Part shown: positions 9,072 to 46,747 of the stretch, in pieces
Layout of the letters: every line of letters starts with the position of its first letter
How positions within the stretch are numbered: position 1 is the stretch's first letter
From: Macrostomum lignano
Taxonomy: Eukaryota
Direction of reading: 5' to 3'
NCBI GenBank assembly: GCA_002269645.1
Contig: NIVC01001227.1
Location: 34,682-82,328, forward strand
Length of the DNA stretch: 47,647 bases
Notes under the pieces: generated by a model
What the model was told of the DNA's origin: nothing
The model's database searches: none
The model's input: the letters and a program-made list of their open reading frames with translations, nothing else
Position numbers and translations under genes: made by a program

Positions 9072-9163
<92 letters not shown>

Positions 9164-9860
9164 GTCTTTCTCTCTTATTTCTCCTCCTCTCTCTACTCTC
9201 TCCCCTCTCCATTCTCCTCTTTCCTCTCCTCTCTCGACTCTCCTCACTCACTTCTCTACCTTTGTCTCTCCTCTCTCCTCTCGTCTCTGTAACCTCTCCT
9301 CTGTTCTCTCTACTCTCCCATCTTTTATCTGTTCACTCTCGTCTCTGCTCTCTCATCCCCCTCTTTAATCTGGCATCTCTGTCTTATATGTTCTCTCACC
9401 TCTCTCTTCTGTACTCTTTTCTTTCCCCTCTTGACTTTTCACTTTCCTTTCTCCTTTCTTCTTTTCTCTTCTCTTCCCTTTTCTATACTCTGTCTCCCTC
9501 TCTTCTCTCACTCCACTCTCCTCTCTCCGTTATCTCTCATCTCTCATTTCTCATCTCTCCTTCCACCTCTCTCATCTCTACAACCTTAGAGATGTAGAGA
9601 TGTATCTTTATCTCTTCTCTCTTCCCTTTACTCTCTCATCTCTTCTTTCACCTGTTTCCTCTCTGCTCTCCTCTCTGCTGTCTCCTCTCTCCTCTCATCT
9701 GCAGCTCTCTGCTCTCTCATCTCGCTTTTCCTCTCTCCCCTCTTCTCCCCCTCTCTCTCATGATCCTCACCCCCTCATCCCTCCTATTATCTTTTATCTT
9801 TTCTTTTATCCCCTCTGTCGCCTCTCCTCTCTTCGAATCGTCTATTCCTTCTTCTTTCCA
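8665..9860. repeat. CT-rich low-complexity tract with a pure (CT)n core at ~9077-9158
   Basis: Direct inspection; strong pyrimidine/purine strand bias. Confidence 0.95.
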
Positions 9861-11102: not shown

Positions 11103-11220
11103 AATCAACCATCTTCAATTTCATATATTGCTGTGGAGTATTTAGCTAAAGCATATTCAGGCAACAATCCTATGACAGCTGGTGTACGCATGCAAACAGC
11201 AAGCCACCTCACTGACCAGA

Positions 11221-13244
11221 ATGCTTCACTGTCTGCTGCTGCGATGCATTCGCCCAAATCCAGCCGCAGCTCTGCCTCGGCTATTGAATCGCTTTGCTGG
11301 CAACTCAGCAACAGCCGCCTCTGGCGGGGCCTCCCCTGCCAGCCCGGCCCCACTGCAGCCAGCGGCCGTGCAGTTCTACAGGCGAGCCCTGCCAGCCAAC
11401 TGCGTGGCATTCGGCAGCCCGAGGGCAAGCAAGTATTCCGCGAGGCCCTTGAGGCCGGCTTCATGGAAGGCTATTTTTCCCTGGCTTCGCAGTATCGAAC
11501 TCAGGACGATCCGTCATTCTGCGGCCTGGCAACGCTGGTGATGTGCCTCAATAGCCTGGAGGTGGATCCTGGAAAAGTTTGGAAAGGTCCCTGGCGATGG
11601 TTTCACGAAGAGATGCTGGACTGCTGCGTGCAGGTGAGGCAGGACAAACAGTCGGGAAGGAACCCAGATCAACGGTTTTCCCAGGGGAGGGTCAGCTGAC
11701 CCCCTTGTCCCCCACAGGATTTAGCAGGGTCTTCTAATCCCCGTGACCCCTTGTCTCCCCCACAGGATATAGCTAGCAGGGATAGCAGGGTCTTCTATTC
11801 CCCGTGACCCCCTTGTCCCCCCACAGGATATAGCAGGGTCTTCTAATCCCCGTGACCCCTTGTCCCTCCCACAGGATATAGCAGGCTCTTCTAATCCCCC
11901 TGACCTCTTTGTCCCCCCACAGGATATAGCAGGGTCAACTAATCCCCGTGACCTTGTCCCCCCACAGGATATAGCAGGGTCAAATAATCCCCGTGATCCC
12001 CTTGCCCCCCCACAGGATTTGGCAGGGCAACTTATCCCTGTGACCTCCTTGTCCCCCCCCCCCACGGGACTTGCTATTGTGCTTGTAATTTTGCGTTGTT
12101 CAGTAATTAAAAAAAATGCAAATACTAATGACCCTACTGTTAGTAGAAATGTAAAAATAGTATTATTTTTTTTGTTCAGCTACTTAGAGTAGAAATATAA
12201 GTAAAATATGCGAAAATACTTGACTTGCGCCCACAGGTGGACCGGGTCCGCAAGCACGGCCTGACCCTGACTGAATTTGCCTGCCTGGCTGGCTGCAATT
12301 CGCTCCAGGTGCGCCGCCTGGTGCATCCCGCCTTCGACGCCGATCCTCAAGCCGACGCCGCCGGCCTCGCCGAATTCGAAGCGACCGTTCGCGACTGCAG
12401 CCGCACGGACGGCTGCATCTTGGTGGCCAGCTACAGCCGGCGAGCGCTCGGCCAGACCGGGGACGGCCACTTCGCCCCGATCGGTGGCTTCCACCCGGAC
12501 AGGCAGCTCGTGCTCATATTCGACACGGCCCGGTTCAAGTATCCGTCGCATTGGGTGCCGCTGCGCCAGCTCTGGGATGCGTTGAAGCTGCCAGACTCGG
12601 CCACTGGACGGCCGCGCGGCTACTGCGTGCTGGCCAAGGCCCCGGGCCTCACCGCCTTCCGCGTCTCGCAGCGATTCGCCACTGGCGTCCGGCAGCCGGA
12701 CTCGCCGCTGCTGCGGCTGGCGCGCGACTTTGAGGACTGGCTGGCCGCGGAGGTTGAGGTGGGTGCGCCAGCCAATCAGATCAGAGAGATGAGTGAAGCT
12801 ATCGCGGCCCTGTCGCAGGCGGCCGGGCAGCTGGGCCGGCTGTGCGGCCGCCACCGGTTGGCCGAGGCCGTTCTCAGTCGGCAGCGTCAGGCCGCGGCGG
12901 ACGCGGATGCCGAGGCTGTGCTGGCGGCGCTACGCTCGCTGCCGGCGCTCGGCCCGGTCGGCGACGCCTTCCTCGCCGGCCTGAGGCAAAGCGCAGCCGC
13001 CGCAGGCGTGGCCGCGGATGTCCAGCTTGAAGGCGACAACGGCTGCGGCGGTGCGGACGGCTCGCTGGCCCTCCTGACGCTGCTGGCTTGGCCGATGCCG
13101 CCGGGTTCGGCCCGTGCCGCTCTGCTAGCGGAGGCGCGCGATTGGGTGCTGCGCTGCGCGCCGAACCGCCTAGCAACGGAGGTGCAGCTGTTGCGCAATC
13201 AGCTATCGACAATATTCGAGATAGCGCCCGTGCGAGTCTCGTGA
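11221..13244 (+). CDS. PCS1: Phytochelatin synthase (glutathione gamma-glutamylcysteinyltransferase); exons 11221-11633 and 12237-13244; 1-nt deletion at ~11418-11420; ~473 aa if corrected
   Basis: FYRRALP...[27 protein letters not shown] (catalytic Cys), [26 protein letters not shown] (His), [11 protein letters not shown] (Asp); phase-0 GT-AG intron. Confidence 0.93.
11700..12060. repeat. Intronic minisatellite (~45-48 bp) in the PCS intron
   Basis: ccccacaggatatagcagggtcttctaatccccgtgacc... about 7 copies. Confidence 0.9.
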
Positions 13245-13759: not shown

Positions 13760-13999
13760 TTTCATTTTTACGTAATTGCTAATCATGATGCAACAACCAA
13801 CTGTAGCTAACCTAATTATAATATTCTGCATTTTAAAAAAAATCCAATTCACTTTTTTATGGAATTATGCAATTTTTAAATATTACAATCTAAGTATTCG
13901 TTTTCATTGCTTTCATCAAGCAAAATTGCAAGTTTTGCATCTGATTTCTATACATTTTTAATGAGAATTACTCGCCATGTGTTCTGCTCTGACGTGAAT

Positions 14000-14816
14000 A
14001 AATAGAATAGATTGCTAATCTAGCCAATCAGAGGTGAATGAATAGAATGGATTGCTAATCTAGCCAATCAGGTGAATTAATAGAATGGATTGCTAATCTA
14101 GCCAATCAGAGGTGAATGAATAGAATGGATTGCTAATCTAGCCAATCAGAGGTGAATGAGTAGAATGGATTGCTAATCTAGCCAATCAGGTGAATTAATA
14201 GAATGGATTGCTAATCTAGCCAATCAGAGGTGAATGAGTAGAATGGATTGCTAATCTAGCCAATCAGAGGTGAATGAATAGAATGGATTGCTAATCTAGC
14301 CAATCAGGTGAATTAATAGAATGGATTGCTAATCTAGCCAATCAGAGGTGAATGAGTAGAATGGATTGCTAATCTAGCCAATCAGAAGTGAATGAATAGA
14401 ATGGATTGCTAATCTAGCCAATCAGGTGAATTAATAGAATGGATTGCTAATCTAGCCAATCAGAGGTGAATGAATAGAATGGATTGCTAATCTAGCCAAT
14501 CAGAGGTGAATGAGTAGAATGGATTGCTAATCTAGCCAATCAGGTGAATTAATAGAATGGATTGCTAATCTAGCCAATCAGAGGTGAATGAGTAGAATGG
14601 ATTGCTAATCTAGCCAATCAGAGGTGAATGAATAGAATGGATTGCTAATCTAGCCAATCAGAAGTGAATTAATAGAATGGATTGCTAATCTAGCCAATCA
14701 GAGGTGAATGAATAGAATGGATTGCTAATCTAGCCAATCAGGTGAATTAATAGAATGGATTGCTAATCTAGCCAATCAGAGGTGAATGAATAGAATGGAT
14801 TGCTAATCTAGCCAAC
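14000..14816. repeat. 40/38-bp tandem repeat (~20 copies), each carrying AGCCAATCAG
   Basis: aatagaatggattgctaatctagccaatcagaggtgaatg and a 38-bp variant interleaved. Confidence 0.95.
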
Positions 14817-15225
14817 AGAGTTATTTTCGTTACTGCGTGTGTACTCTTGTCATGTCTAATACAATTAATCACAATATATTAAGTACTTAATATTCTTAGG
14901 CCGCTTCTATTTTTCTAGGATGACAAGTAACAATTGCAGTTGACTGGATTGCCTGCAGTTTGATGATAAGCTGGTGATATAAGCTTTTGTTTTATTGTAA
15001 TTATATGTACTTTTACTGTTTATTAACGCTTGTAAAAAAACCTAGTTTTTCCTTACGCAGCCAAGTACTGTAAACAATACAAATATAATGTACTTATACA
15101 AGTGAGATTTTTGATGCGCTTTTTGAAGAAAGGTCTCTGTAAATGCTTTTAAAATTCCGGGTATCATCTGTGCTCACGGCTAATACTTAAAATTATTAAA
15201 ACCTTGCATTGTTTGGCTGCCAACT

Positions 15226-15767: not shown

Positions 15768-18700
15768 TCAGAGACGCGTATTGTCATTGTTGAAAGAGAG
15801 CCCGGTGCACTGGTTCTCCTTCCACCAGCCGCCCAGGTGAATTCCGTAGTAATTCTTGTGCGCCTCCACGCAGGCCATCAGGTTGGAAGGGCTCAGGCAG
15901 GACCGCCAGTTGTCCGAGGAGTTGGCGCAGCTGCTGTCCTCGTTAATCGGCGTGCCGGTGCAGATGCGGTGGCCGCCGCTGCCGGGCAGCATGTCGGCAG
16001 TTCTCGCGAAGAAGACCTCGGTGCCGTGATGGTAGGGGAAGCCGAGGTGCCCGGAGCAGCTGAAGGGCGCAACCAGACGGGAGACGCCGCGGCTCGACAG
16101 CATCACCGGCGAGCAGATTGGCAGGTGCACGATGAGGTCCTGGAGAGTTTGAGCACATTTTTTATCCTGGAATCACGGTTACTTATTAGACTAGCTGAGG
16201 AAATGCCTCATATTGAGAGCACTTGGCCATCTGAGAAACTCCTCATTGACAGCACTTGGCCATCTGAGCAACTCCTCATTGAGAGCACTTGGCCATCTGA
16301 GCAACTCCTCATTGAGAGCACTTGGCCATCTGAGCAACTCATCATTGAGAGCACTTGGCCATCTGAGCAACTCCTCATTGAGAGCACTTGGCCATCTTAG
16401 CAACTCCTCATTGAGAGCACTTGGCCATCTGAGCAACTCCTCATTGAGAGCACTTGGCCATCTGAGCAATTCCTCATTGACAGCACTTGGCCATCTGAGC
16501 AACTCCTCATTGAGAGCACTTGGCCATCTGAGAAACTCCTCATTGAGAGCACTTGGCCATCTGAGAAACTCATCATTGAGAGCACTTGGCTATCTGAGCA
16601 ACTCATCATTGAGAGCACTTGGCCATCTGAGAAACTCCTCATTGAGAGCACTTGGCCATCTGAGCAACTCCTCATTGAGAGCACTTGGCCATCTGAGCAA
16701 CTCCTCATTGACAGCACTTGGCCATCTGAGCAACTCCTCATTGAGAGCACTTGGCCATCTGAGCAACTCATCATTGAGAGCACTTGGCCATCTGAGCAAC
16801 TCCTCATTGACAGCACTTGGCCATCTGAGCAACTCCTCATTGAGAGCACTTGGCCATCTGAGCAACTCATCATTGACAGCACTTGGCCATCTGAGCAATT
16901 CCTCGTTGAGCAAGATTTGCAATAGTCTCACATTTCCGTGCACTACTCGCCAGCTGTTGGGCACCAGCCTGTCGAATGCCCTGGCAAAGAAATAGTCACC
17001 AACTCTCGGCTCGCCGAGCGAGTAGAAGGCCAGACGGCCGGGCGTCACGCCATCAATGGCGGCCAGACTGGCTGCTGCGAGGGCCGCCATTGCGCCTCCG
17101 AGTGAGTGTCCGGTGACCAACAGGCTGTGGTCAGGGTTGGCCCGCATCAGCGCCAGCGTCGGCTCGTGAAGCTGCGGCCAGAGCGCTTTGAATCCGTTGC
17201 TAAAGTACGCCTGTACTTTGCCGCCGATCGGGAAGGCCTCCTTGGGCATGGCGAGGCCCATGAGGCCCTCAACCAGCAGTTGGCTGCTGCCGGTGGTGCC
17301 ACGAAAGGCGAGCACGATCAGCTTGCGGTCCGGCAGGCGGCCTGTGGTTCAGGTTTTGGAACTTTTATTTTTGTTTCTCTATCAATGACTTCTTTAAGTC
17401 TGTATGGGGGTTTTGCCCAGCAAACTCGAACTTGAAAACAAACAGCAGCAAAACAGAGTAGGAAAAGCGTCTCAGGGCGCGCCTCAAGACTTGGGATCGA
17501 ACGTCAGAATCTGAAGCGCTGGCGTCAGCAGCTGCAACTCTTTTATCAGCTGTGACCAGCAGGACTTGACAAGACTCTGTGACCTACCTGCTGGAGTCGC
17601 CGACGTCACGACAGGTGGCTAAGTCTGCATTTTTGATGACTTCCCGCTCAGGGGGTGTCTGAACTGGCGGGATGTCTCTCCGACATTTGCGGAACGGCGT
17701 CACAGAAGACACAGTGGTAGAGAGCCGCAGCCTGTCTGTCATGCATACTGTATGACTGATGGTTGCTGTTGGTAGAATAGAATCTACAACTTAGCTTTTC
17801 GGCTTAGATGTAGCTTACTCGTAACAGAAGCATGCAACAGTAATTTCTAGCCTTTGCTCTGCTTACATGTCCTCCGTGAGAAAGAGACATTATTTCGGAG
17901 CAAAGTCAGCAAATCTAGCTAGAGAACTCACCAACAAAGCCGGAGCACTCGTCGTGCAGCATGTCGCAGGCTGCCACGCCTTTGACGACGTCAACTAGAC
18001 GGCCTCCGCCTGCCTGCGCCGCCGGCGGGAAGTTCGCCAGACAGGGCGCCGGCTCCGGAGCGTAGGCAGCGCCCGAGATAGCGGCGGCCAGCTCGCTCAG
18101 CCGGGCGTCGAACTCGTAGTGGCCGTTGTCCGGCTCGTGGCACTTGCCGGGATCCACGACCTCCTGCGCATGATTGAACTTAATTACTTATTGAAGCGCC
18201 TTACGCTTGTAATTTGAAAACTCAGTTATAGAGTTTGAGAGGTCAAAACTAGCATAAAGCTCATAAAGCTTGATTATGAGCTAGTTTTTATCATTTAGTT
18301 CTTAAACTCAGCTGCAGTTTTTGTCGTTTGGTATCCATAATATGATATCCATCGGAAGGCTTGACTTGTCGACTGTCGGGTGTGAATCCTTAATTTCATG
18401 GCAAATCCCATCTCTTCGTGAATACAAAAAAGTATCTTTAAAAAAAGCTCAGAAGTGCAAGGAAGACAATTTGTTTTAGGAAGTACGAGCTATTTTTTAA
18501 AGCTTTCGTTGTCCATATCGAGCAAGAAGAATACTCGTAACTCCTGTTGTAACCAATAAGACGCTTTGGTTATAAAGGTTAGCGCAAAGGCTTACAGCGG
18601 CCCTTTCACACCATCATCAGTCCTCAAGGGCGCCAATCGGACGACAAGCCCATTGCGGCCAATATCTGTGCACGAGCCCTAAATTAATGCGGCCACGCAC

Positions 18701-19001
18701 TGAATCGAATCCGGTACTTTGTCGCAAGATTTAGCTTGTAGACGCGTTAGACTGAACCTGGCAAAAGGATAGGGAATTGCCCCCGTACCTGCGAGGACGA
18801 GCACTTGTTGACGAGGGAGCCGGGCTCGTGGCAGGCCAGGTCGATGGGGCACCATCGGCAGGAGGTGCCCAGCCAGGACTGGCTGGTGGCGCACTTGGCG
18901 CAGTCGGTGTGACTGGAGCAGCTCTCCCGCCTGCCGGCGCGGCCAGCCGACGATGCCAGCAGTAGCGCCGGGAGCAGCGCAAGAATCAACGGCCGCAACA
19001 T
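15768..19001 (-). CDS. Secreted class-3 lipase with an N-terminal PSI-like Cys-rich domain; exons 19001-18789, 18163-17932, 17341-16932, 16139-15768; 408 aa
   Basis: Signal peptide MLRPLILALLPALLLASSAG; C-x5-C-x2-C...CRWC...C; LIVLAFRGT, VTGHSLGG (Ser), GEPRVGD, N-DLIVHLP (Asp), AHKNYYG (His); splice phases consistent, total 1227 nt. Confidence 0.9.
16209..16905. repeat. 33-bp intronic minisatellite (~21 copies), lipase intron 3
   Basis: attgagagcacttggccatctgagcaactcctc. Confidence 0.95.
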
Positions 19002-19838
19002 TTCCTGGCTGCGTGTACTTTTGTGCTACTTTTCTGTAGGAAGTCCTTTCTGCTCCTGGCTTATGAAGCCCAAATAGTATCTGGAGAAACTTTAGTCCGT
19101 AGCAATGGATAAGCGGACAATCGGCCTATGGAGAGGCTTTTTTGTTCGCTAAAATAATCGACTCAAGAGGCCATCTGCCAGCACTCTCAGGCAGTTCGAA
19201 GGTTGAATCAGCTTTTGGCAAATGCCGTGCGTCTGGTACGTGCCGCTGCTATTATATAAATTGTATCGCATATCACAGATTTAGTATACTGAATAACATG
19301 ACTTGAACAACTGCGTGGCTTCATGACCTATACTCTGTCAGATTTGCCAATTCAAGCAGTTTAAATAGCTGATCTCGCATCACGTGAGGAGCATGTAACC
19401 ATGACCTGGAAGAAATCCCTCTAATGTCGATCTGAGCATTCGCTTTGAGCATTCAATGAACGTGCTACGAGTGTTATAGTGACGCAATTACTTCCATGAG
19501 CAATCGCATGCATGCATAAACTGTACAAAAGCACGTCACATTGCTTCTGCTTGAATGTATTGGCGAAGTTAAATGATTTATTGCAAAACACATTCTAAAT
19601 AAGCATTACAGATCAATTCCGACAGCCAAGCGGTAATTAGTAACGGCGCATAAGTTGCGTAGGCAATCGCGCTGAATAGGAGCTGGATAATCCATTGTTA
19701 CGTCATGTTAAATTTTGAATCAAAATCTCACAAGGCAATATGTTACATGAAAGTTCAGAGTACAAAGCTGTTAAAAATTAGATGCATTTGAAGAGGTTTG
19801 GAGCAGTCGGGACTGCATGAATTGCAGCTGTTGATCTG

Positions 19839-21012
19839 TCACCAAAATCGACCCCGAGCGCCCAGGTGAGCAGTCAGCGCCCTCCTCGGACACACCTCCG
19901 GGTCCTTGACGTCCCTGTGGAGTAGCACGATGCCGCGCTGCCGAGCGGTCTCAGTCGCTGTCTCAAGATAGAGGCTGGATTCGAACTTGCGATCGAAGAT
20001 GTCGAGGTAGGACAGACTCTCGGCCAGGCAGAGAAACTGCAGCAGGGCTTCGTCGCTGATGCGGGGCACACCGAAAAGGTTGAGGTGTCGCAGGTGCGGG
20101 CAGACTGTGCGGATCGACTCCAGGCTGCGGCCGGTGAGGTTGTGACAGCAGGTGAGATTCAGCGTCTCCAGCTGGGGGAGGCCCTGCAGCAGCGATCTCA
20201 GGTTGGAGTCGGTCATTAGGTAGCCATGGCGACGTAGATTCAGGATACGCAGGCCGGGGCATCGGGTGCGAACGATGGCGAGCGACTTCGGTGTCAGGTA
20301 GCAGCCTTCGAGGTCCAGGATTTCAAGTGAAGAGGACAGTATGCAATCCAGAGTTTGATTGTTGAGCATCTTTTTACTGCGAAGCCGCTGTATGAGTTGG
20401 CTGCGGGAGAACAAAAGTTTTTCATGCTTTGCATAATAATTCGACTCTGTTTGTCCATATTTATTGTGTAGCAACTTTTGCTTACCTTATCAGATAGTCG
20501 TCATTGAAATCGGAGAAGTCGTATTGCTTAATGTTCATGGCAATGGCATCCAGGCATATTTCTCCAAGTTTTTTTACTCTTGAATTGTCATGAAATGGCT
20601 TCTAAAAAGGAAGGAAGTAGTTTTACGTTTAAATCTAACTTGAACTGTTAATTGTTGTCATTTAGCTGAAAATATCTATGAATGGCATCTTTAAGACCGA
20701 AGTGATACTTACCTCTTCAAGCCGCCGTCCAAACGTAGCTCGAACAAATTGCTGACCATTTAAAGCATCCTGCTTTATTTCAAATCGTTTCACCCCTCGA
20801 AAGGAGACATCTTCTGTTATTACTGACTTCAACAATTCTTGTGCGTATCCTTTAAGTAAACTGCACTCAAGAAGCTCGTCGAGATCTACAAAGTCCCCGT
20901 CGTTAACTGCAAGACCCTCTTTGGCAGCACCATATCGAAGTAAATAAGCAAGAATTTTTCCTATCCGTTTGCGCACAATGGGGTCTAGCTGGCCCCTCAG
21001 CTTGTCTTTCAT
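19839..21012 (-). CDS. Protein with a Tpt1/KptA (RNA 2'-phosphotransferase) N-terminal-lobe-like domain, a BC-box-like motif and AMN1/FBXL-type LRRs; exons 21012-20713, 20601-20486, 20400-19839; 325 aa
   Basis: KILAYLLRYGAAKEGLAVNDGDFVDLDELL...VKRF...VRATFG resembles the KptA N-lobe; KLGEICLDAI; repeats SLEILDLEGC, GLRILNLRR, QLETLNLTCC, HLRHLNLFGV, SLSYLDIF; GT-AG introns give an open 978-nt frame. Confidence 0.8.
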
Positions 21013-21574: not shown

Positions 21575-24500
21575 ATGCAAGTTTTGCGGGTGTTATTTAT
21601 CTTTCTGGCTGTTGCATGCGTTAATGCTCAAGCTGGGCAAAGGGAGCCACAAAGATTTCAAAAGCCAAAGCTTGCGTCATTCACGATGCCAACCTTGAAA
21701 GTTCTTTATTGGTAAGAGCTCTTTTTATTTTGATGGCTAATATTGAAATTAGTCTTTAGGTCCAAAACTAAGAGATAGGTCAGCCTTATGTATGAAGTTA
21801 TGTTATGTAGGCCCTAGGCGGCCAGGCCTACTTAATAAATTAAATAATAATACCTTACTTTGGGCTACACTTAGGCCTAGGCCTAGTTTAACATTTAAGA
21901 ATAAGTATTTAAAAAAATTGCCATTTTTTGTGCTTTGTATAATAGGGGGTTAGTTTCTTTTAGTGATAATCCATAGTTATCATAGTTTGGAAGGCAACAT
22001 ATATGCCAAGATTTCCTGGTGTATGACAAGGGTCTTACCATTTTTCAGCATATACCAAGGTATATCCTGGCATACATGGCACAGTAGAGTAGATACATCA
22101 TGTTAAATGATAATTTTTTTATATTGGCACACAAACCTGGTCTAGTGTGGTGTACAAATGAGGTTGTCATTTTTTCTAGCATTAAACCTGGCGTACACTA
22201 ATATACCATCCAAACTATGGCATAATTAGGATTAAATAAGGCAATACTCAGCAAATTTCACCAATTTTTCTAGTGCAAATAGGCTATTTCTCCAATGCAC
22301 TAGGCATCCTTTGTTCTTATAGTTATATTTGTATTTTTTGAAGTTTTTTTGCTTTTGCTTAATTATAGCACAGATTTCCTTTTTTAGTATATAGGATTAT
22401 GCTAAGTATATGCCCAAGCCAGGCGCAGATCTAGAAAATTTTTGAGTAGGAGGCCAAGCTATACCAAGCACTATAACCCTATATTGGAAAATAGACCTGG
22501 TATAGTAATAGGCCAAAAAAGTATGATTAAAATTTCTTTAGCTGCGGCTAAGGAAGGGGGCCATGGCCCCCCTCTGGATCTGCCCCTGGCCCAAGCAAAA
22601 ATTGAGTAAATACAAAAGTATACCAAAAAATAAGTACATACTCTAATAAATGACGTTTGAGTTGCAATAATAAATAACCTTTTTGCATTGCATAAGGGGT
22701 ATGCAGTCATTTTGTCTGCTACCTTTTTGTCTACTGACAGACAAAACAACTTTTTAAGAAGAAAAATGAAGGTATAGCTACATAGCTAATAAAGCTAATT
22801 TTCTATAATTAATTATTGCAAATCATGCAAAGAGTTAAAATGGGGTGTCAGTTTTTCTAAGTGTAATTTTGTTTATAGCAATATTTCAAAGAAATATGAT
22901 ATAAATTTTAAATATCCATAGAAAAGAAGAACGTATACTGATAAGAAAGGATGCTGTAGTTATGAATATTGAAGGCAGAGACAGAGCTCATTGTTAAAAA
23001 TCATTTGCTGGCTATTATGAGCATTATTATGACCCGATCCAATGATAATTAATGCATTTTCATTAGGAACAATTATTCAGCTTACAAAATTCATATACAA
23101 AAAGTTAGTGTATGTGTATATGTATACTATGGGTCCCTTGGGAAAAATATTTTTAGATTATACACTTGTGCTTCTAGTTCTAATATAATGTACTTTTTAA
23201 GATATAAAGGTTTTATTTTTATTATTATATGTATCAGCCTCATACAACAACAACAACAAGGTACTGCTCCCGCCGGCCACGCAGTAGCCAGAAAGGGGGG
23301 AGCAGTCAGAAAGTGCGTCTCTGGGCCATTGCCCTCAGGTTGAAGGTGGCAATTCTAAACGCGCTTCCTGGTACAGCTGGGGCCCGGACTTGTTGGGCCT
23401 CACGGTCTCCTGCGCCACCAGGCAGAACCAATTGGATAGGGGCCGGGTCAAGCAAACTTGCTCCCAGTCTTTCCACTTCCACCTCGAAGTGTCTATGCCT
23501 CTGGGCTTGCCACTCTCCCATCTATCACACCTGGCAAGCTCTAGGCAGTCCAGCACCCAAACCCCCAATCACCCCATCTGTGGTCTGCACTGAGGGGAGC
23601 AGAAACACAACACTGTTGTTAAGAAACTCATAGAGTTGACTATAACAATTGTTATTATTTATTTAGTCTTATAGTCTTAATTAACAAAGTCTATTTAAAG
23701 TCTGTTATGATTAATATAATAGAATTATACCACAATGTTTTGCACAGATTTGAATTTAATATGTGCATCTGTAGTCATGCCCCCTAAATCTTTACCTGTA
23801 TATAGAGCATTAAGTGTTTAATTATAGGTTTTTAGTTTTCTTTATTGCTAGTCATGTGGCACTTACTATAGCTTTCTTAAACCCATTTTATATACTGTGA
23901 TATCCCAATTTTAGCATACATAAATTGATTTAATGTCAGTTCAAGTCTTTATATTTTACTTTTAATTCCCATATTTTTAGTTACTCCTGAGGCTACCGCC
24001 GGGTGTTTGAGGAATTTGCCCACATCTTGTCGCAGAAGTTCCCCACTCTGCACATCGAAGGGGACAATTATCCTCCACCCACATGGCGGCAACAACTGTG
24101 CAGCACTCTGTCAGTCATCAAATTCGCCATCATCATTGCTATCCTATCCGGCTTGGATCCGTTCCCCTACCTGGGCGTGGCCACTCCCCACGTGTTCACC
24201 CTGGCGCAGGAGAACAAGCTCTACGCCTGCATGATGTTGTTCTTTGTTGGCAACGCGATCGAGGGCCAGCTCATCTCCACTGGGGCTTTTGAAGTGTCCT
24301 ACAATGGTCAGTGTGAATGGGTGAATGGGCAGGGGGTTTGCGGGCGACATCCTCCCGCATCCAGCACTGAGGCGATTCTCTGTGCCCTGGGGGTTGGCCC
24401 TCATGGCTGTGAATGGCACAACTCCCCTCCCCCCCAATATGAAACCTACGCCAGCATCCATCATCAACCCGGTAAGCTCAACCCAACCCGCAGACATGGT

Positions 24501-24606
24501 CATCTGGTCCAAACTGGAGAACGGCCGCGTGCCCTCGCCAAGCGAACTGATTAACATTATCGACAGCCAGTTATCGATGAGCTCATCGTCCATTCCTAGT
24601 TCATAG
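21575..24606 (+). CDS. SELENOT: Selenoprotein T; exons 21575-21711, 23981-24306, 24494-24606; Sec UGA at 23988-23990; 191 aa
   Basis: Signal peptide, then LYC|YS-UGA-GYRRVFEEF (CxxU), IEGDNYPP, ENKLYACMMLFFVGNAIEGQLISTGAFEV, IWSKLENGRVPS; phases consistent (576 nt). Confidence 0.95.
22420..22588. mobile_element. hAT-family MITE (169 bp) in SELENOT intron 1
   Basis: TIRs caggcgcagatctaga / tctggatctgcccctg (14/16 match); 8-bp TSD gcccaagc at 22412-22419 and 22589-22596. Confidence 0.85.
23243..23620 (-). mobile_element. Probable short non-LTR (RTE-like) derivative in SELENOT intron 1
   Basis: GC-rich island in an AT-rich intron; minus-strand FRIATFNLRAM resembles the start of an APE endonuclease; (TTG)n tail at the 3' end. 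Confidence 0.35.
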
Positions 24607-25900: not shown

Positions 25901-25993
25901 ATTAAAATAAAGTTGGCCAGTGCAAAGAATTTCCCCATAGATTTCGAGACCGAATATTCGACCCCCCCCCCCCCCACAGCTGCAGCAGCAGGC

Positions 25994-27461
25994 ATGACCA
26001 CAGCTCACAGGCCGACATTCGACACCGCCCGCGGCGGGCAGGGCATGCGCGAGCGCGACCTCAGCGCCCAGTCCAAGCAGTACAGCTCGCGCGATCTGCC
26101 CAGCCACACCCGCCTGAAATACCGCCAGGACGGCCAGGGCACCGCCGAGGATGCCCGAGTCAGCAGCCGCGACTTCAAGCGCGACCTGGAGGACCGCGAG
26201 CGCCGACATCGCGGCGGCGGCGGCGGCAGCAGCGCCGATGAGCCATCGACCTCCTCTTCGTCGTCGAAGCGGGCCCGCCTGACCGACGGCTCCGCTGCGG
26301 CGCTGCCGGCCAACCTGGACGCCGACGACGCGGCCGTGGCCGCCGCCGACTTGGATTCGGACGCCGACTCCGCCGACGAAGGCGACGAGGACGAAGCGGC
26401 CGAGTTGATGGCCGAGCTGGCCAAGATTCGGCGCGAGCGGGAGGCGGAGGCCGCGCGCAGGTGGGTCTTGAAGTGTCCGTGGGCATTGTCCTTGTAGACT
26501 CGGCTGGGATTTCCCTTCTAGAATCAGATGGGATTTCCCTTCTAGAGTCAGCTGGGATTTCCCTTCTAGAGTCAGCTGGGATTTCCCTTCTAGAGTCAGC
26601 TGGGATTTTCCTTCTAGAGTCAGCTGGGATTTCCCTTCTAGAGTCAGCTGGGATTTCCCTTCTAGAGTCAGCTGGGATTTCCCTTCTAGAGTCAGCTGGA
26701 ATTTCCCTTCTAGAGTCAGCTGGGATTTCCCTTGTAGAGTCAGCTGGGATTTCCCTTGTAGAGTCAGCTGGGATTTCCCTTGTAGAGTCAGCTGGGATTT
26801 CCCTTCTAGAGTCAGCTAGGATTTCCCTTGTAGAGTCAGCTGGGATTTCCCTTGTAGAGTCAGCTAGGATTTCCCTTGTAGAGTCAGCTGGGATTTCCCT
26901 TGTAGAGTCAGCTAGGATTTCCCTTGTAGAGTCAGCTGGGATTTCCCTTGTAGAGTCAGCTGGGATTTCCCTTCTAGAGTCGGCTGGGATTTCCCTTCTA
27001 GAGTCGGCTGGGATTTCCCTTGTAGAGTCAGCTGGGATTTCCCTTGTAGAATCAGCTGGGATTTCCCTTGTAGAGTCAGCTGGGATTTCCCTTGTAGAGT
27101 CAGCTGGGATTTCCCTTGTAGAGTCAGCTGGGATTTCCCTTCTAGAGTCCCTTCACCATTCTCCAGTCACCTAATTCCCCCTTTCCCCTGCAGAGAGGCT
27201 GAGCGGCAGGCAGATGAGGAGCGCATCCGCACGGAGAACATTCTTAAGGGCAACCCGCTGCTTAACAAGTCCAAGCAGGGCGCCTCGTCCAGCGGCTCGG
27301 GAGGCGGCGACTTCAAAGTGAAGCGTCGCTGGAACGACGACGTCGTATTTAAAAACTGCGCCCGCGACGATGACGAAGGTCGGCAGCGGCCGGCCAGCTT
27401 CATTAACGACACGCTGCGCTCGGAATTCCACAAGAAGTTCATGGACAAGTACATTAAATAG
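25994..27461 (+). CDS. CWC15: Spliceosome-associated protein CWC15; exons 25994-26460 and 27194-27461; 244 aa
   Basis: [89 protein letters not shown]. Confidence 0.97.
26497..27148. repeat. 24-bp intronic minisatellite (~27 copies), CWC15 intron
   Basis: gagtcagctgggatttccctt(c/g)ta. Confidence 0.95.
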
Positions 27462-27764: not shown

Positions 27765-28597
27765 GCTCGCTGCCTAATGGGAATCTAAGCTCACTGGCCC
27801 AATGCCTAATGGGAGTCTAAGTTCACTGGCTCGCTGCCTAATGGGAGTCTAAGCTCACTGGCCCAATGCCTAATAGGAGTCTAAGTTCACTGGCTCGCTG
27901 CCTAATGGGAGTCTAAGCTCACTGGCCCAATGCCTAATGGGAGTCTAAGCTCACTGGCCCATTGCCTAATGGGAGTCTAAGCTCACTGGCCCAATGCCTA
28001 ATGGGAGTCTAAGTTCACTGGCTCGCTGCCTAATGGGAGTCTAAGTTCACTGGCTCGCTGCCTAATGGGAGTCTAAGCTCACTGGCCCAATGCCTAATGA
28101 GTCTAAGCTCACTGGTCCACTGTCTAATGAGAGTCTAATCTCACTAACCCACTGCCTAATGGGAGTCTAAGTTCACTGGCTCAATGCCTAATGGGAGTCT
28201 AAGCTCACTGATCTACTGCCTAATCGGAGTCTAAGCTCACTGGCCCAATGCCTAATGAGAGTCTAAGCTCACTGGCCCACTGCCTAATGGGAGTCTAAGT
28301 TCACTGGCTCAATGCCTAATGGGAGTCTAAGCTCACTGATCTACTGCCTAATCGGAGTCTAAGCTCACTGGCCCAATGCCTAATCGGAGTCTAAGCTCAC
28401 TGGCCCAATGCCTAATGAGAGTCTAAGCTCACTGGCCCACTGCCTAATGGGAGTCTAAGTTCACTGGCTCAATGCCTAATGGGAGTCTAAGCTCACTGAT
28501 CTACTGCCTAATCGGAGTCTAAGCTCACTGGCCCAATGCCTAATGAGAGTCTAAGCTCACTGGCCCACTGCCTAATGGGAGCCTAAGCTCCTAAGCT
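27765..28597. repeat. 32-bp intergenic minisatellite (~26 copies)
   Basis: gcctaatgggagtctaagctcactggcccaat with variant blocks. Confidence 0.95.
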
Positions 28598-28675: not shown

Positions 28676-31603
28676 ATGGTGCCCACACCGCGCAGTCTCA
28701 GAAGCAGAAGACCTGCTTCCGCCTCTGCTACAGCAGTGCTCTCAGAGAAGCAGCAGCAAGCGGCGGCAGCTCCCAGCGCTGCCAAGCGCCAGATAAAAGC
28801 AGACACAAAGAAGACTGTTCCAGACAAGAAGAAAGCCAGAAAGCAAAAACAACAGGCAGCCACTGCTGCATCTCCGCAACCTCCGATGCAGCGGAAACTG
28901 CAGCCGGATCTGCTGCTTCTGGGCGCCCACGTCTCAGTGGCCGGCGGCCTGCACCGCGCCTTCGCTAACGCGCGCGCAATCGGCGCTGACAGCCTGGCGC
29001 TATTCGTGCGCAACCAGCGCCGATGGGAGTCGAAGCCGCTGCTGCCTGAGGAGGCCGCCGAGTTTCAGTCGGCGATGCGGAGCAGCGGTTTCAAGCCGGA
29101 GGCTGCGCTGCCGCACGGCAGCTACCTCATCAACTGCGCCTCTCCCAATGCCGAGGTCAGGCGGCGCAGTCTGACGGCTTTGATCGACGAGATGGACAGG
29201 TTGGAAATCGGGAAATTTTCGCTCTGTGCGATCCTGTCCATTGCAGTGTGTTTATGTGCACTGGCTGATGATAATTTCCCCTGGATAACCAGCAGGGATT
29301 TCCCTTGAAAAACCAGAAGGGATTCCCTAGAGAGCCTGCAGGGATTTCCCTTGAAAAACCAGAAGGGATTCCTGAGAGCCAACAGGGATTCCCTAGAGAG
29401 CCAGCAGGGATTTCCCTTGAAAAACCGGAAGCGATTTCCTATAGAGCCTGCAGGGATTTCCCTGAAAAACCATAAGGAATTCCCTAGAGAGCCTGCAGGG
29501 ATTTCCCTTCACAAAACAGAAAGGATTCCCTGGAGAGCCAGCAGGGATTTCCCTTGAAAAACCAGAAGGGATTCCCTGAAGATCCAACGGGGATTTCCCT
29601 TGAAAAACCAGAAGGGATTCCATGAAGAGCCAGCAGGGATTTCCCTTGAAAAACCAGAAGGGATTCCCTGAAGAGCCAACGGGGATTTCCCTTGAAAAAC
29701 CAGAAGGGATTCCCTAGAGAGCCAGCAGGGATTACCCTAAAAACTGAGCTTCCACTGAGCTTCAATGTGAGTTTCAAACCTGCGATACGCGCGAGGAGCC
29801 GGGACCTTACCTGTGAACAAACGCGCTTGCAGTTCTATTTAACTATTCAAATGCATTCTTTTCTTGCTACTCAAGAGTAGGCGAACTCTTTTTGGCATAA
29901 CTGCCTGCCTCAACGCTGGCTGAGGGTGCCTTGATTTTCGGTAGTGTCCAACCCCCCCCCCCTCCCTCCGTGAATGATGGAGAGGACACTGGAGAAATGT
30001 ACATTCCTTCTATTTATCAGCAAAGGGTATTTTACAATTTTTATAAAGTGCCAATTTCCCATTCCCGTCAGGTGCCGCAGGCTGGGCCTCCAGCTGTACA
30101 ATCTTCACCCCGGCTCAGCTGGTGCCGCTAATCATGACCGGCCGGTCGCCATTGAGCGTCTGGCCGATGCGCTGGCCGAGGCTCTGACTACAGTGCCCGA
30201 CGTTTGCCTGGTGCTGGAGAACGCGGCAGGACAGGTGAGCCCCGGGTTCGGAATTCCCCTGTTCCCTGTGAATGAGTGTCCGCCCCCTTCCCCTGTTCCC
30301 TGTGAATGAGTGTCCGCCCCCTTCTCCTGTTCCCTGTGAATGATTTCCCGCCCCCTTCCCCTGTTCCCTGTGAATGAGTTTCCGCCCCCTTCTCCTGTTC
30401 CCTGTGAATGAGTGTCCGCCCCCTTCCCCTGTTCCCTGTGAATGAGTGTCCGCCCCCTTCCCCCGTTCCCTGTGAATGATTTCCCGCCCCCTTCCCCTGT
30501 TCCCTGTGAATGATTTCCCGCCCCCTTCCCCTGTTCCCTGTGAATGATTTCGCGCCCCTTTCCCCTGTTCCCTGTGAATGAGTGTCCGCCCCCTTCCCCT
30601 GTTCCCTGTGAATGAGTGTCCGCCCCCTTCCCCTGTTCCCTGTGAATGAGTGTCCGCCCCCTTCCCCTGTTCCCTGTGAATGATTTCCCGCCCCCTTCCC
30701 TGTTCCCTGTGAATGATTTCCCGCCCCCTTCCCCTGTTCCCTGTGAATGATTTCCCGCCCCCTTCCCCTGTTCCCTGTGAATGAGTGTCCGCCCCTTCCC
30801 TGTTCCCTGTGAATGATTTCCCGCCCCCTTCCCCTGTTCCCTGTGAATGAGTGTCCGCCCCCTTCCCCTGTTCCCTGTGAATGAGTGTCCGCCCCCTTCC
30901 CCTGTTCCCTGTGAATGATTTCCCGCCCCCTTCCCCTGTTCCCTGTGAATGATTTCCCGCCCCCTTCCCCTGTTCCCTGTGAATGAGTGTCCGCCCCCTT
31001 CCCTGTTCCCTGTGAATGATTTCCCGCCCCCTTCCCCTGTTACCTGTGAATGAGTGTCCGCCCCCTTCTAGCCTGGCTCCCCAGGCCGTGCTGTTCCCAT
31101 TATCCAGCAAAAAAATCCCCAACTCCAAAACGCAGGGCGGCAGTCTGGGAGGCAGCTTCACCGAGCTCGGCGACATTCTGACCGCCGTCCGCGGCCGTCT
31201 GCCAGCAGCGACGGACGCCGACAGCCGGCTGGGCGTCTGCATCGACACCTGCCACGCCTTCGCCTACGGTTACGACCTCCGCTGCCGGGCCGGGCTCGAC
31301 GCCGCCTTCGCAGAGCTGGCCGAGGCCCTCGGCCACCGGCCGCTGCTCCGCGGCCTTCACCTCAACGACTCCCGCGGCGGCCTCGGCTCTCGGGTCGATC
31401 GACACGCCGACATCGGCGACGGGCAGCTGGGCGCCGCGGCCTTCCGCCTGCTGCTGAGGCACCCGGCCGTCACGGCTGCGGCCGCGGCCCGCCCGCTGCC
31501 CATGGTGCTGGAGACGCCCGGGGTCGATCGGTACGGACTGCAGCTGGCCGCGCTGCGGGACCTGCTGCGGGACCCGGATGAGGAGGGCGATGGCCGAGAA
31601 TGA
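28676..31603 (+). CDS. APN1: AP endonuclease family 2 / endonuclease IV (APN1-like); exons 28676-29199, 30072-30234, 31136-31603; 384 aa
   Basis: [51 protein letters not shown] (Zn ligands intact); basic NLS-like KKKARKQK; phases consistent (1155 nt). Confidence 0.95.
29265..29740. repeat. ~46-bp intronic minisatellite, APN1 intron 1
   Basis: gcagggatttcccttgaaaaaccagaagggattccctagagagcc, about 10 copies. Confidence 0.92.
30255..31068. repeat. 34-bp intronic minisatellite (~24 copies, two variants), APN1 intron 2
   Basis: tcccctgttccctgtgaatga(gtgtc/tttcc)cgccccct. Confidence 0.95.

Positions 31604-36010: not shown

Positions 36011-46747
<10,737 letters not shown>

What the first reader, a model, noticed from the sequence alone, without database searches (positions are those of the whole stretch)
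19839..21012. Tpt1/KptA RNA-binding lobe fused to a BC-box-like motif and LRRs: a possible RNA-sensing E3-ligase adaptor
Seen: exon 1 encodes only a Tpt1-like N-lobe (LLRYG, GL..N.GDFVDLDELL, VKRF, VRATFG). Exon 2 has KLGEICLDAI (LxxxCxxxI) and exon 3 has five cysteine-type LRRs, all in one open spliced frame. Known: Tpt1 needs an Arg-His-Arg-Arg tetrad and a separate C-terminal NAD+ lobe; here His is Tyr and the NAD lobe with the fourth Arg is absent. BC-box + LRR is the layout of Elongin BC-Cullin substrate receptors. Inference: a catalytically dead reader of 2'-phosphorylated or otherwise damaged RNA ends, coupled to ubiquitination. I know no characterised protein with this architecture. 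The first BC-box position (K) is non-consensus.
Basis: partly seen in the sequence, partly recalled or inferred. Interest (0 to 1): 0.8.

Follow-up and report, generated by a model that had tools for sequence, protein, structure and literature searches.

The report
Dead Tpt1 RNA lobe fused to LRRs
This flatworm gene encodes an old, conserved, unstudied protein that keeps only the RNA-phosphate-binding half of the enzyme Tpt1/TRPT1 and joins it to a leucine-rich-repeat domain of the kind found in ubiquitin-ligase adaptors. It is probably a non-catalytic reader of phosphate-marked RNA, not the "2'-phosphotransferase" that databases call it.

Summary
A three-exon gene on the minus strand (21012-19839, GT-AG introns) encodes a 325-aa protein identical to Macrostomum lignano BOX15_Mlig021724g1.

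- **Residues 10-100: a Tpt1/TRPT1 RNA lobe.** Pfam scores it above the cut-off, the family profile matches mouse TRPT1 at E 3.6e-13, and the AF2 model superposes at 1.6 Å. The two phosphate-binding arginines are kept, the catalytic His is Tyr, and the NAD+ lobe is absent.
- **Residues 109-160: a three-helix cap.**
- **Residues 160-300: six CC-type LRRs,** closest to F-box LRR proteins.

The fusion is ancient. Collinear orthologues occur in annelids, molluscs, echinoderms, hemichordates, amphioxus, cnidarians, a nematode, Amoebozoa and Capsaspora. Both Macrostomum introns are conserved in Capitella and Dreissena.

Two relatives, including Capsaspora, add a C-terminal NADAR domain, which ties the family to nucleic-acid ADP-ribosylation.

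The E3-adaptor reading is plausible but unproven. The bare BC-box motif appears in 42% of shuffles. Its Leu is invariant, however, and the cap is homologous to a module that aligns in register with the ZYG11B VHL box and the Elc1-binding N-terminus of Rad7. The same module also matches the non-E3 protein DRC5. No paper describes this architecture.

The parts
20713..21012 (-). Exon 1, codons 1-100: the Tpt1/TRPT1 RNA-binding (winged-helix) N-lobe.
   Evidence: The intron after codon 100 (phase 0) is at the same position in Capitella and Dreissena.
20932..20937 (-). Codons R26-Y27. These correspond to Arg17-His18 of TkoTpt1 and Arg18-His19 of CthTpt1. The Arg is kept (19 of 20 family members) and the His is Tyr (Tyr in 14, His in 5).
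   Evidence: Alignment and column counts. Contact roles come from PMC12678800 and PMC6333775.
20785..20790 (-). Codons K75-R76. R76 corresponds to the second 2'-PO4-binding Arg (TkoTpt1 Arg65) and is kept in 18 of 20 members. The Lys is shifted by one position relative to TkoTpt1 Lys63.
20602..20712 (-). Intron 1, 111 nt, GT-AG.
20486..20601 (-). Exon 2, codons 101-138 plus two bases of codon 139. It holds the junction (KPFHDNS), helix A of the cap and the start of helix B (FNDDYLI).
20542..20571 (-). BC-box-like motif KLGEICLDAI (residues 111-120). L112 is invariant in 20 of 20 family members and in all 35 sequences once the related module is included. C116 is kept in 13 of 20, and position 120 is I or V in 19 of 20.
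   Evidence: It aligns in register with ZYG11B L18/C22. The motif alone is at chance level.
20401..20485 (-). Intron 2, 85 nt, GT-AG, phase 2.
   Evidence: The position is conserved in Capitella and Dreissena.
19839..20400 (-). Exon 3: the rest of the three-helix cap, six CC-type LRRs, a poorly conserved tail ending in GRFW, and the stop codon (19839-19841).
19917..20339 (-). LRR domain, residues 160-300. The repeat period is about 26 aa, with strands at 166, 191, 218, 244, 270 and 297.
   Evidence: AF2 model; phmmer match to FBXL2 at 1e-13; Foldseek top hits are FBXL17, MAX2, SKP2 and FBXL2.
19577..19582 (-). AATAAA, the likely polyadenylation signal, about 260 nt after the stop codon.
   Evidence: Read directly from the sequence. 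This is an inference only.

Best explanation
The gene encodes a non-catalytic paralogue of the RNA 2'-phosphotransferase TRPT1/Tpt1. Only the RNA lobe survives. In real Tpt1 enzymes this winged-helix half does most of the recognition of an RNA 2'-phosphate, or of a terminal phosphate.

The RNA lobe is tethered by a short junction to a three-helix cap and six cysteine-type leucine-rich repeats. The most likely mode of action is as an adaptor. The N-lobe docks on RNA that carries a 2'-, 3'- or 5'-phosphate mark, or an ADP-ribosyl-phosphate mark, using R26, R76, K19 and Y27. The cap and LRRs hold protein partners.

The most probable partner of the cap is an Elongin C/cullin (or Skp1-like) module. 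In that case the protein would be the substrate-receptor subunit of a ubiquitin ligase acting on proteins associated with such RNAs.

Shown: the gene structure, the domain identities, the loss of the catalytic lobe, conservation of the phosphate-binding arginines and of the cap Leu, and the age of the fusion.

Inferred: RNA binding, the kind of RNA mark, and the ligase connection.
For: - Gene model: the spliced frame is open and identical to an NCBI protein. Both introns sit at the same positions and phases in an annelid and a mollusc. Relatives are encoded as uninterrupted ORFs on mRNA-like contigs of about 1.1 kb and on a Trinity transcript.
- N-lobe: Pfam scores above the cut-off. The family profile matches eukaryotic TRPT1 at about 1e-13. 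The model superposes at rmsd 1.6 Å.
- Contact residues: of the TkoTpt1 residues that contact nucleotide or phosphate (S9, K10, R17, H18, K63, R65, Y77), this protein has G18, K19, R26, Y27, V74 (with K75 shifted by one), R76 and F94. R26 and R76 are kept in at least 18 of 20 members. PMC12678800 concludes that the N-lobe plays the major role in 2'-PO4 recognition.
- Constraint: among 12 full-length animal orthologues, the N-lobe and the cap are the most conserved parts (40% mean identity each), against 31% for the LRRs and 10% for the tail.
- Cap: the AF2 model shows three helices (112-122, 135-147, 153-159) before the first LRR, at pLDDT above 90. hhalign gives 98% probability (E 1.5e-13) to an 'SLxDLCIxxI...LPEEL' module of large amoebozoan LRR proteins.
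- Link to known Elongin C binders: that amoebozoan module aligns in register with the ZYG11B VHL box (L18/C22 and F50/P51/V54). It also aligns with the N-terminus of Rad7 in the Rad7-Elc1 crystal entry.
- LRRs: the closest matches by sequence and by fold are F-box LRR receptors and Rad7.
Against: - No Pfam F-box, SOCS-box or VHL model matches the cap, even at E up to 10.
- The cap profiles give only marginal PDB matches, and these include non-E3 proteins: DRC5/TCTE1 at E 1e-3 and NPR1 helices at 2e-3.
- The Macrostomum protein departs from the family consensus at several cap positions: K111, G113, A119 and N133 in place of the Cul2-box Pro.
- The BC-box motif alone is at chance level.
- The catalytic His, which contacts the junction 3'-phosphate, is replaced. 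Lys63 of TkoTpt1 has no equivalent at the same position.
- The NADAR-fused relatives suggest an enzymatic, non-ubiquitin ancestral role.
Confidence: 0.4

Rival explanations
1. The protein is an RNA-repair or de-ADP-ribosylation targeting subunit with no ubiquitin link. The ancestral protein would have been an N-lobe, an LRR scaffold and a NADAR hydrolase, which removes ADP-ribose from nucleic-acid bases. Animal members lost the NADAR domain. They would now deliver a separate enzyme (a NADAR, macrodomain, ligase or TRPT1) to marked RNA through the LRRs, or shield such RNA by competing with TRPT1.
For: - Capsaspora CAOG_08465 (P0119) and a eukaryotic metagenome protein (P0038) have the same N-lobe, cap and LRRs plus a C-terminal NADAR domain (Pfam 1e-27 and 1e-29).
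- These two proteins are also the most Tpt1-like members, keeping LRH and YGHS.
- NADAR enzymes reverse base ADP-ribosylation of DNA and RNA (PMC11833690, PMC12945103).
- The cap module also occurs in non-E3 LRR proteins such as DRC5.
Against: - Only two NADAR-fused lineages were found, so the direction of gain or loss is unknown.
- The amoebozoan member lacks NADAR.
- No partner enzyme is identified.
- It does not explain why the cap Leu is invariant and why the cap is as conserved as the N-lobe.
Confidence: 0.3
2. The winged-helix lobe has been re-purposed and no longer reads RNA phosphates. The protein would be an ordinary LRR adaptor, and its N-domain would bind a protein or a small phospho-ligand such as ADP-ribose-1''-phosphate or Appr>p.
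For: - The His is replaced by Tyr in most animal members.
- S9 and K63 of TkoTpt1 have no conserved equivalents at the same positions.
- In Tpt1 the same N-lobe residues also touch the ADP-ribose 1''-phosphate.
- Winged helices are versatile domains.
Against: - The two arginines that clamp the 2'-phosphate, the neighbouring K19, and R91 and R96 are conserved across more than ten phyla.
- In RslTpt1, mutating the His to Ala reduces step-2 catalysis only threefold.
- A Tyr hydroxyl can still bond to a phosphate (inference).
Confidence: 0.15
3. The protein is a Skp1-binding, degenerate F-box/LRR protein rather than an Elongin C binder. It would still be an E3 adaptor, but of the SCF type.
For: - The family consensus FPDEYLINxIIxRL resembles helix 1 of the F-box (LPDELLLxIFsxL).
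- Two of 18 related modules give weak F-box-like Pfam hits (E 0.026).
- The best structural neighbours are all Skp1-bound FBXL proteins.
- NCBI names some orthologues 'SKP2-like' or 'FBXL7-like'.
Against: - No F-box hit for any family member at E up to 10.
- hhalign probability to the SKP2 F-box is below 6%.
- There is no counterpart of the Trp-containing third F-box helix.
- The conserved helix A upstream has no F-box equivalent, but it does match the BC-box register.
Confidence: 0.1
4. The finding is an annotation artefact: a decayed TRPT1 fragment lying by chance next to an LRR gene, or a pseudogene.
For: One UniProt model (A0A1I8J8S8, 716 aa) merges this gene with the downstream lipase, so automatic models at this locus are unreliable.
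Against: - The architecture is collinear in more than 20 clusters from at least ten phyla or lineages.
- Intron positions are conserved.
- Relatives are found on transcript contigs.
- The reading frame is open and the splice sites are canonical.
Confidence: 0.02

Closest known systems
TRPT1 / Tpt1 / KptA (RNA 2'-phosphotransferase, NAD+-dependent)
   Same: The N-terminal winged-helix RNA lobe is homologous: about 26% identity, rmsd 1.6 Å, profile E about 1e-13, and closest to the eukaryotic TRPT1s. The two arginines that clamp the 2'-phosphate are kept.
   Different: The whole NAD+/ADP-ribosyltransferase lobe is missing, together with the fourth catalytic Arg. The His is Tyr. The protein therefore cannot transfer phosphate to NAD+, and the UniRef name '2'-phosphotransferase' is a mis-annotation.
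ZYG11B / ZER1 (CRL2 substrate receptors: VHL box, then LRRs, then ARM repeats)
   Same: An N-terminal three-helix box is followed directly by LRRs. The cap Leu and Cys align with ZYG11B L18 and C22, which contact Elongin C. The family motif F-P-D-E-Y aligns with F50-P51-x-x-V54, which contacts CUL2.
   Different: The alignment is indirect and weak (hhalign 26% direct, 69% through the related module). There is no ARM domain. The spacing between the two boxes is shorter. The Macrostomum protein has Asn in place of the Cul2-box Pro. Binding is untested.
Yeast Rad7 (LRR subunit of the Rad7-Rad16-Elc1-Cul3 ligase; PDB 5zb2)
   Same: Rad7 has CC-type LRRs (phmmer 1.2e-3; Foldseek rank 31). Its N-terminal 'SLQSLCITKI' helix, followed by '...L.KNRALNDHTLQLFL', matches the same cap module (E 2.8e-3), and the entry is a crystal structure of Rad7 with Elongin C (Elc1).
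   Different: Rad7 has no nucleic-acid-binding lobe of its own and works with the Rad16 ATPase on DNA. The similarity is marginal.
F-box/LRR proteins (FBXL2, FBXL17, SKP2, KDM2B, plant MAX2/TIR1)
   Same: These are the best sequence and fold matches for the LRR domain. They share the overall plan of a three-helix adaptor box followed by CC-type LRRs.
   Different: No F-box is detectable in this protein.
Capsaspora owczarzaki CAOG_08465 and metagenome protein P0038 (Tpt1 N-lobe, cap, LRR, NADAR)
   Same: They are collinear and homologous over the N-lobe, cap and LRRs, and belong to the same family.
   Different: They carry a C-terminal NADAR domain and keep the Tpt1 His and the GHS motif. The flatworm protein ends after the LRRs. 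Both are uncharacterised.
DRC5 / TCTE1 (axonemal nexin-dynein regulatory complex LRR subunit)
   Same: Its 'VPLLTELCIQHIIRNF...LPE' segment is the best PDB match of the related cap module (E 1.2e-3).
   Different: To my knowledge it is a structural axonemal protein with no known Elongin or cullin link. It shows that the cap can be a plain LRR N-cap.

Membership tests
Tpt1/KptA RNA 2'-phosphotransferase (enzyme) | N-terminal RNA (winged-helix) lobe | tested here: met
   Pfam PF01885 scores 32.5 bits against a cut-off of 26, matching profile positions 4-84. The family profile matches TRPT1 at 3.6e-13. Foldseek gives rmsd 1.6-1.8 Å over 85 columns.
Tpt1/KptA RNA 2'-phosphotransferase (enzyme) | C-terminal NAD+-binding ADP-ribosyltransferase lobe | tested here: not met
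   Nothing matches profile positions 85-177. In the AF2 model, residues 101-325 are three helices plus LRRs.
Tpt1/KptA RNA 2'-phosphotransferase (enzyme) | Arg-His-Arg-Arg catalytic tetrad | tested here: not met
   R26 and R76 are present, His is Tyr27, and the fourth Arg is absent together with the NAD+ lobe.
Elongin BC-box / VHL-box substrate receptors (CRL2/CRL5) | BC-box motif [STPA]LxxxCxxx[AILV] | tested here: inconclusive
   K-L112-x3-C116-x3-I120 is present, but the first position does not fit the consensus. L is kept in 20 of 20 members, C in 13 of 20, and I or V in 19 of 20. The bare motif occurs in 42% of shuffles, and a second copy lies inside an LRR.
Elongin BC-box / VHL-box substrate receptors (CRL2/CRL5) | Cul2 box (PhiPxxPhixxxPhi) or Cul5 box downstream of the BC box | tested here: inconclusive
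   The family consensus F-P-D-E-Y fits the first five positions (P in 14 of 19 members). The last hydrophobic position is off by one. This protein has F-N-D-D-Y, with no Pro.
Elongin BC-box / VHL-box substrate receptors (CRL2/CRL5) | Three-helix box next to the substrate-binding domain, homologous to a proven box | tested here: inconclusive
   Three helices are modelled at pLDDT above 90. hhalign gives 98% to the related module. That module matches ZYG11B at 69% in register and Rad7 at E 2.8e-3. It also matches DRC5 and NPR1, and there is no Pfam SOCS or VHL hit.
Elongin BC-box / VHL-box substrate receptors (CRL2/CRL5) | Physical binding of Elongin C/B and a cullin | not testable with these tools
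   No multimer prediction or experiment is available here.
F-box/LRR (FBXL) proteins | CC-type LRR domain | tested here: met
   FBXL2 at 1e-13, FBXL5 and FBXL17. The Foldseek top hits are FBXL17, MAX2, SKP2 and FBXL2.
F-box/LRR (FBXL) proteins | F-box (PF00646 / PF12937) | tested here: not met
   No hit at E up to 1 for the whole protein or at E up to 10 for 19 family linkers. hhalign to the SKP2 F-box is below 6%.
Uncharacterised Tpt1-N-lobe/LRR orthologous group (Capitella CAPTEDRAFT_190319, Branchiostoma LOC118404341, Patiria LOC119730347 and others) | Collinear full-length similarity with shared intron positions | tested here: met
   36-41% identity over at least 95% of the length. More than 20 clusters match along the whole profile. 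Both introns are shared with Capitella and Dreissena.
Tpt1-N-lobe/LRR/NADAR proteins (Capsaspora type) | C-terminal NADAR domain | tested here: not met
   There is no NADAR hit. The protein ends at residue 325, with a stop codon followed by a poly(A) signal.

The most novel reading that the evidence does not exclude
This family would be the first dedicated, non-enzymatic 'reader' of RNA 2'-phosphate or (ADP-ribosyl-)phosphate marks in animals. It would couple that mark to cullin-RING ubiquitination through a VHL-box-like cap. This would imply that such RNA marks exist endogenously in animals that lack yeast-type tRNA ligase, and that they are used as signals. Possible settings are RNA damage, antiviral defence or toxin defence.
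Probability: 0.2. Interest if true: 0.85.

Novelty: new variant of a known kind. Interest (0 to 1): 0.6.

Why it matters
What Tpt1/TRPT1 chemistry is for in animals is an open question. Animals do not make 2'-phosphate tRNA splice junctions the way fungi do. An ancient paralogue under purifying selection keeps only the phosphate-recognising lobe. It is wired to a protein-recruiting LRR module, and in Capsaspora also to a NADAR ADP-ribosyl hydrolase. That suggests phosphate- or ADP-ribose-marked RNA is read as a signal and not merely repaired.

The protein offers a concrete handle: a small domain to use as an affinity probe, and a gene to knock down in Macrostomum, Branchiostoma, Hydractinia or Capsaspora. 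The family appears to be absent from vertebrates, arthropods and fungi among the named members, which would explain why it has escaped study.

There is also a practical point. Databases name these proteins '2'-phosphotransferase', 'SKP2-like' or 'FBXL7-like'. None of these names is justified by the domains present.

Tried and rejected
- **Word-indexed homologue searches.** Searches with the family alignment and with the NADAR-type alignment returned almost nothing new. The exhaustive HMMER search was what revealed the family.
- **Cap profile against Pfam and PDB.** There was no significant match. The merged profile gave only marginal and mixed hits.
- **F-box reading.** No F-box model matches. 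It is kept only as a low-probability rival.
- **Pseudogene or mis-join.** Rejected on conservation of the architecture and of the introns.
- **Fusion with the downstream lipase (UniProt A0A1I8J8S8).** Rejected. This gene has its own stop codon and AATAAA. The lipase ORF starts at 19001 with its own ATG and a signal peptide.
- **Selection test between the two Macrostomum copies.** Uninformative, because the copies differ by one synonymous base.
- **Is the conserved P(F/Y)-H-(D/E)-G-(T/S) after the N-lobe a relic of the NAD-lobe H-G-T motif?** Left open. The spacing is about 10 residues too short, and the most Tpt1-like members lack it.
- **Literature searches.** Searches for the architecture and for the locus tags found nothing.
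- **Canonical TRPT1 in M. lignano.** Whether the genome also has a full-length TRPT1 could not be checked with the collections on hand.
Full report
**Observation.** The minus strand between 21012 and 19839 carries three exons (21012-20713, 20601-20486, 20400-19839). They are joined by GT-AG introns of 111 and 85 nt into a 978-nt open frame of 325 codons. An in-frame stop lies 11 codons upstream of the ATG. The product is identical over its full length to the NCBI protein BOX15_Mlig021724g1 of the flatworm Macrostomum lignano. The window matches contig NIVC01001227.1 base for base over 21 kb. A second copy on NIVC01001230.1 differs by one synonymous base in the gene.

**The N-lobe is a real Tpt1 RNA lobe.**
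- Pfam PTS_2-RNA scores 32.5 bits against a cut-off of 26. It covers residues 15-99 and only profile positions 4-84 of 177.
- A profile of 23 family N-lobes matches mouse TRPT1, chain 7yw4 and human TRPT1 at E 3.6e-13 to 8.4e-13. Archaeal and bacterial Tpt1 match at 1e-9 to 1e-10.
- An AF2 model (pLDDT 89.4, pTM 0.70) superposes on mouse and human TRPT1 over 85 columns at rmsd 1.6-1.8 Å.

The structural papers list the TkoTpt1 N-lobe residues that hold the nucleotide and its 2'/3'-phosphates: Ser9, Lys10, Arg17, His18, Lys63, Arg65 and Tyr77. They conclude that the N-lobe plays the major role in 2'-PO4 recognition (PMC12678800). By the alignment, the equivalents here are G18, K19, R26, Y27, V74 (with K75 one position along), R76 and F94.

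Across 20 family members, R26 is kept in 19, R76 in 18 and R91 in 18. Position 27 is Tyr in 14 and His in 5. In RslTpt1 the His-to-Ala change costs only threefold in step 2, whereas the two arginines cost hundreds-fold (PMC6333775). The phosphate clamp is therefore preserved. The catalytic half (the NAD+ lobe and the fourth Arg) is entirely absent.

**What follows the N-lobe.** The AF2 model gives a lower-confidence junction at about residues 95-108. Then come three helices (112-122, 135-147, 153-159). After that there are six beta strands with a period of about 26 residues (166, 191, 218, 244, 270, 297), so there are six LRRs, not five. The LRRs are the cysteine-containing type. The best sequence matches are FBXL2 (1e-13), FBXL5, FBXL17, KDM2B, Rad7, SKP2 and TIR1/COI1. 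The best fold matches are FBXL17, MAX2, SKP2 and FBXL2, with Rad7-Elc1 at rank 31. No F-box, SOCS-box or VHL model matches.

**The fusion is ancient and is a single gene.** An exhaustive HMMER search of 1.84 billion representatives found more than 20 clusters that match collinearly from the N-lobe through the LRRs. The named members come from:
- Annelids: Capitella, Dimorphilus.
- Molluscs: Dreissena, Liolophura, Elysia, Lottia, Sinanodonta, Plakobranchus.
- Echinoderms: Patiria, Apostichopus.
- A hemichordate (Saccoglossus) and amphioxus (Branchiostoma).
- Cnidarians: Rhopilema, Hydractinia.
- A nematode (Soboliphyme).
- The amoebozoan Soliformovum (a Trinity transcript) and the filasterean Capsaspora.

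No vertebrate, arthropod or fungal member appeared among the named clusters. Both Macrostomum introns sit at the same codon and phase in Capitella and Dreissena, which have two further introns. One relative is an uninterrupted ORF on mRNA-like contigs of about 1.1 kb seen in 16 samples. Among 12 full-length animal orthologues, the N-lobe and the cap are the most constrained parts (40% mean identity each). The LRRs are at 31% and the tail at 10%.

**NADAR relatives.** Capsaspora CAOG_08465 (585 aa) and a eukaryotic metagenome protein (448 aa, an intronless ORF beside a CHORD-domain gene) share the N-lobe, cap and LRRs. They add a C-terminal NADAR domain (Pfam 1e-27 and 1e-29). They also retain the Tpt1 'LRH' and 'YGHS' motifs. 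NADAR enzymes remove ADP-ribose from nucleic-acid bases, though not from phosphate ends (PMC11833690, PMC12945103). This places the family in the nucleic-acid ADP-ribosylation network and gives a strong rival to the ubiquitin reading.

**The BC-box question.** Taken alone, LxxxCxxx[AILV] means nothing here. It occurs in 42% of shuffles of this protein, and a second, even 'stricter' match lies inside an LRR at residues 218-227. What carries weight is conservation and homology.
- L112 is invariant in all 20 family members. C116 is Cys in 13 (otherwise S, T, G, A or L). Position 120 is I or V in 19.
- The 63-residue cap profile has no significant Pfam or PDB match.
- The cap is clearly homologous to the module 'SLxDLCIxxI...P.L.G.LPEEL...KLxDxxLxxLL', which precedes the LRRs of large amoebozoan proteins (hhalign 98%, E 1.5e-13).
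- That module matches the N-terminus of Rad7 in the Rad7-Elc1 crystal entry (E 2.8e-3). It also matches DRC5/TCTE1 (E 1.2e-3).
- The module aligns in register with the ZYG11B VHL box (hhalign 69%, pairwise E 4.6e-5). The cryo-EM paper reports that L18 and C22 of that box contact Elongin C, and that F50, P51 and V54 contact CUL2.
- The family's own cap aligns with ZYG11B only over the BC helix (26%). Matches to the SKP2 F-box, VHL and SOCS2 are below 6%.
- The family consensus F-P-D-E-Y fits the start of the Cul2 box PhiPxxPhi. The Macrostomum protein has Asn for the Pro, plus K111, G113 and A119 where the family has R/S/T, L and Y.
- A merged profile gives marginal hits to NPR1 helices next to its BTB domain, to DRC5 and to Rad7.

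The cap therefore belongs to a widespread LRR N-cap module. At least two members of that module use it to bind Elongin C, and at least one apparently does not. Membership in the BC-box class is undecided.

**Mechanism.** I commit to an adaptor model (confidence 0.4). The N-lobe reads a phosphate-type mark on RNA: 2'-PO4, a terminal phosphate, or their ADP-ribosylated forms. The cap and LRRs recruit proteins, most probably an Elongin C-cullin module.
- Shown: domain identities, loss of catalysis, conserved clamp residues, the invariant cap Leu and the age of the fusion.
- Inferred: RNA binding, the nature of the mark and the ligase link.
- Rivals: a targeting subunit for RNA repair or de-ADP-ribosylation with no ubiquitin link (0.3); a re-purposed N-domain (0.15); a degenerate F-box (0.1); an annotation artefact (0.02).

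**Novelty.** Full-text searches for the architecture, for NADAR/KptA fusions and for the two locus tags found no description. The proteins are in public databases only as 'uncharacterized', as '2'-phosphotransferase' (UniRef), or as 'SKP2-like' and 'FBXL7-like' (NCBI). All the functional names are unsupported by the domains present. I rate it a new variant of a known kind: a Tpt1-derived pseudo-enzyme 'reader' lobe on an LRR adaptor.

Noticed in passing
window 15768-19001 (minus strand); ORF 18747-19001: The downstream neighbour is a Lipase_3 gene. Its first exon begins with its own ATG and a signal peptide (MLRPLILALLPALLLASSAG...) followed by a Cys-rich stretch. One UniProt model (A0A1I8J8S8, 716 aa) merges it with the Tpt1N-LRR gene, which is probably a gene-model merge artefact.
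   Followed up: partly
whole window, e.g. 997-3026, 13994-14820, 16212-16910, 26490-27149, 27771-28590, 30254-31068, 34149-35045: The window is packed with minisatellites of 16-160 bp units (32 TRF rows at score 200 or more). They explain the strong local GC and AT skews in the composition profile.
   Followed up: no
window 8729-9288 and 38728-39923: There is a long degenerate (CT)n tract of about 560 bp, and a very regular (ACTA)n microsatellite of about 300 copies.
   Followed up: no
L002 vs L003 (contigs NIVC01001230.1 and NIVC01001227.1): The assembly holds two copies of the locus. The gene differs by one synonymous base, the 800 bp downstream are 99% identical, and the 2 kb upstream are only about 86% identical with many gaps. 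These are recent duplicates or haplotypes, as expected for this genome.
   Followed up: partly
window 11136-13244 (+), 24231-24606 (+), 25982-27461 (+), 28697-31012 (+): Neighbouring called genes, mapped from L003, are a phytochelatin synthase, an Rdx-family small protein, Cwf/Cwc15 (a splicing factor) and an AP_endonuc_2 (xylose-isomerase-like TIM barrel) protein. I see no obvious functional link to the finding.
   Followed up: no
protein residues 101-108 (window about 20578-20601): Directly after the N-lobe, most animal orthologues share P-(F/Y)-H-(D/E)-G-(T/S)-x-V, with His in 14 of 20. This resembles the NAD-binding H-G-T motif that opens the Tpt1 NAD+ lobe and could be a relic of it. However, the spacing is about 10 residues shorter, and the most Tpt1-like members lack it.
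   Followed up: partly
protein residues 144-151 (exon 3, window about 20364-20387): Helix B of the cap and the loop after it carry a conserved basic patch, R-L-(K/R)-R-x-K-K-L. It could be a nuclear localisation signal or a second RNA-contact surface.
   Followed up: no
protein C-terminus, residues 294-325 (window 19842-19937): Spiralian orthologues (Macrostomum, Capitella, Dreissena, Liolophura and cluster P0022) share a tail RGI..V.(K/R)..DP......G(K/R/Q)(F/I/V)W that ends exactly at the C-terminus. Other phyla lack it. Its function is unknown.
   Followed up: no
P0005 (Branchiostoma hybrid XP_078584683.1, 487 aa): This model repeats the segment 'MLHKLRRRRQLTNAVLRSLLSRSLDSLDLHDMYFTNGTA' four times. 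This looks like tandem exon duplication or an assembly or annotation artefact in that genome.
   Followed up: no
P0031, P0035, P0126 and others (Amoebozoa: Cavostelium, Clydonella, Pellita): Large LRR proteins of 650-2400 aa carry a perfect BC-box-consensus helix (SLxDLCIxxI) followed by LPEEL just before CC-type LRRs, with no F-box. They form an uncharacterised and possibly large class of candidate Elongin-C-type receptors in amoebae.
   Followed up: partly
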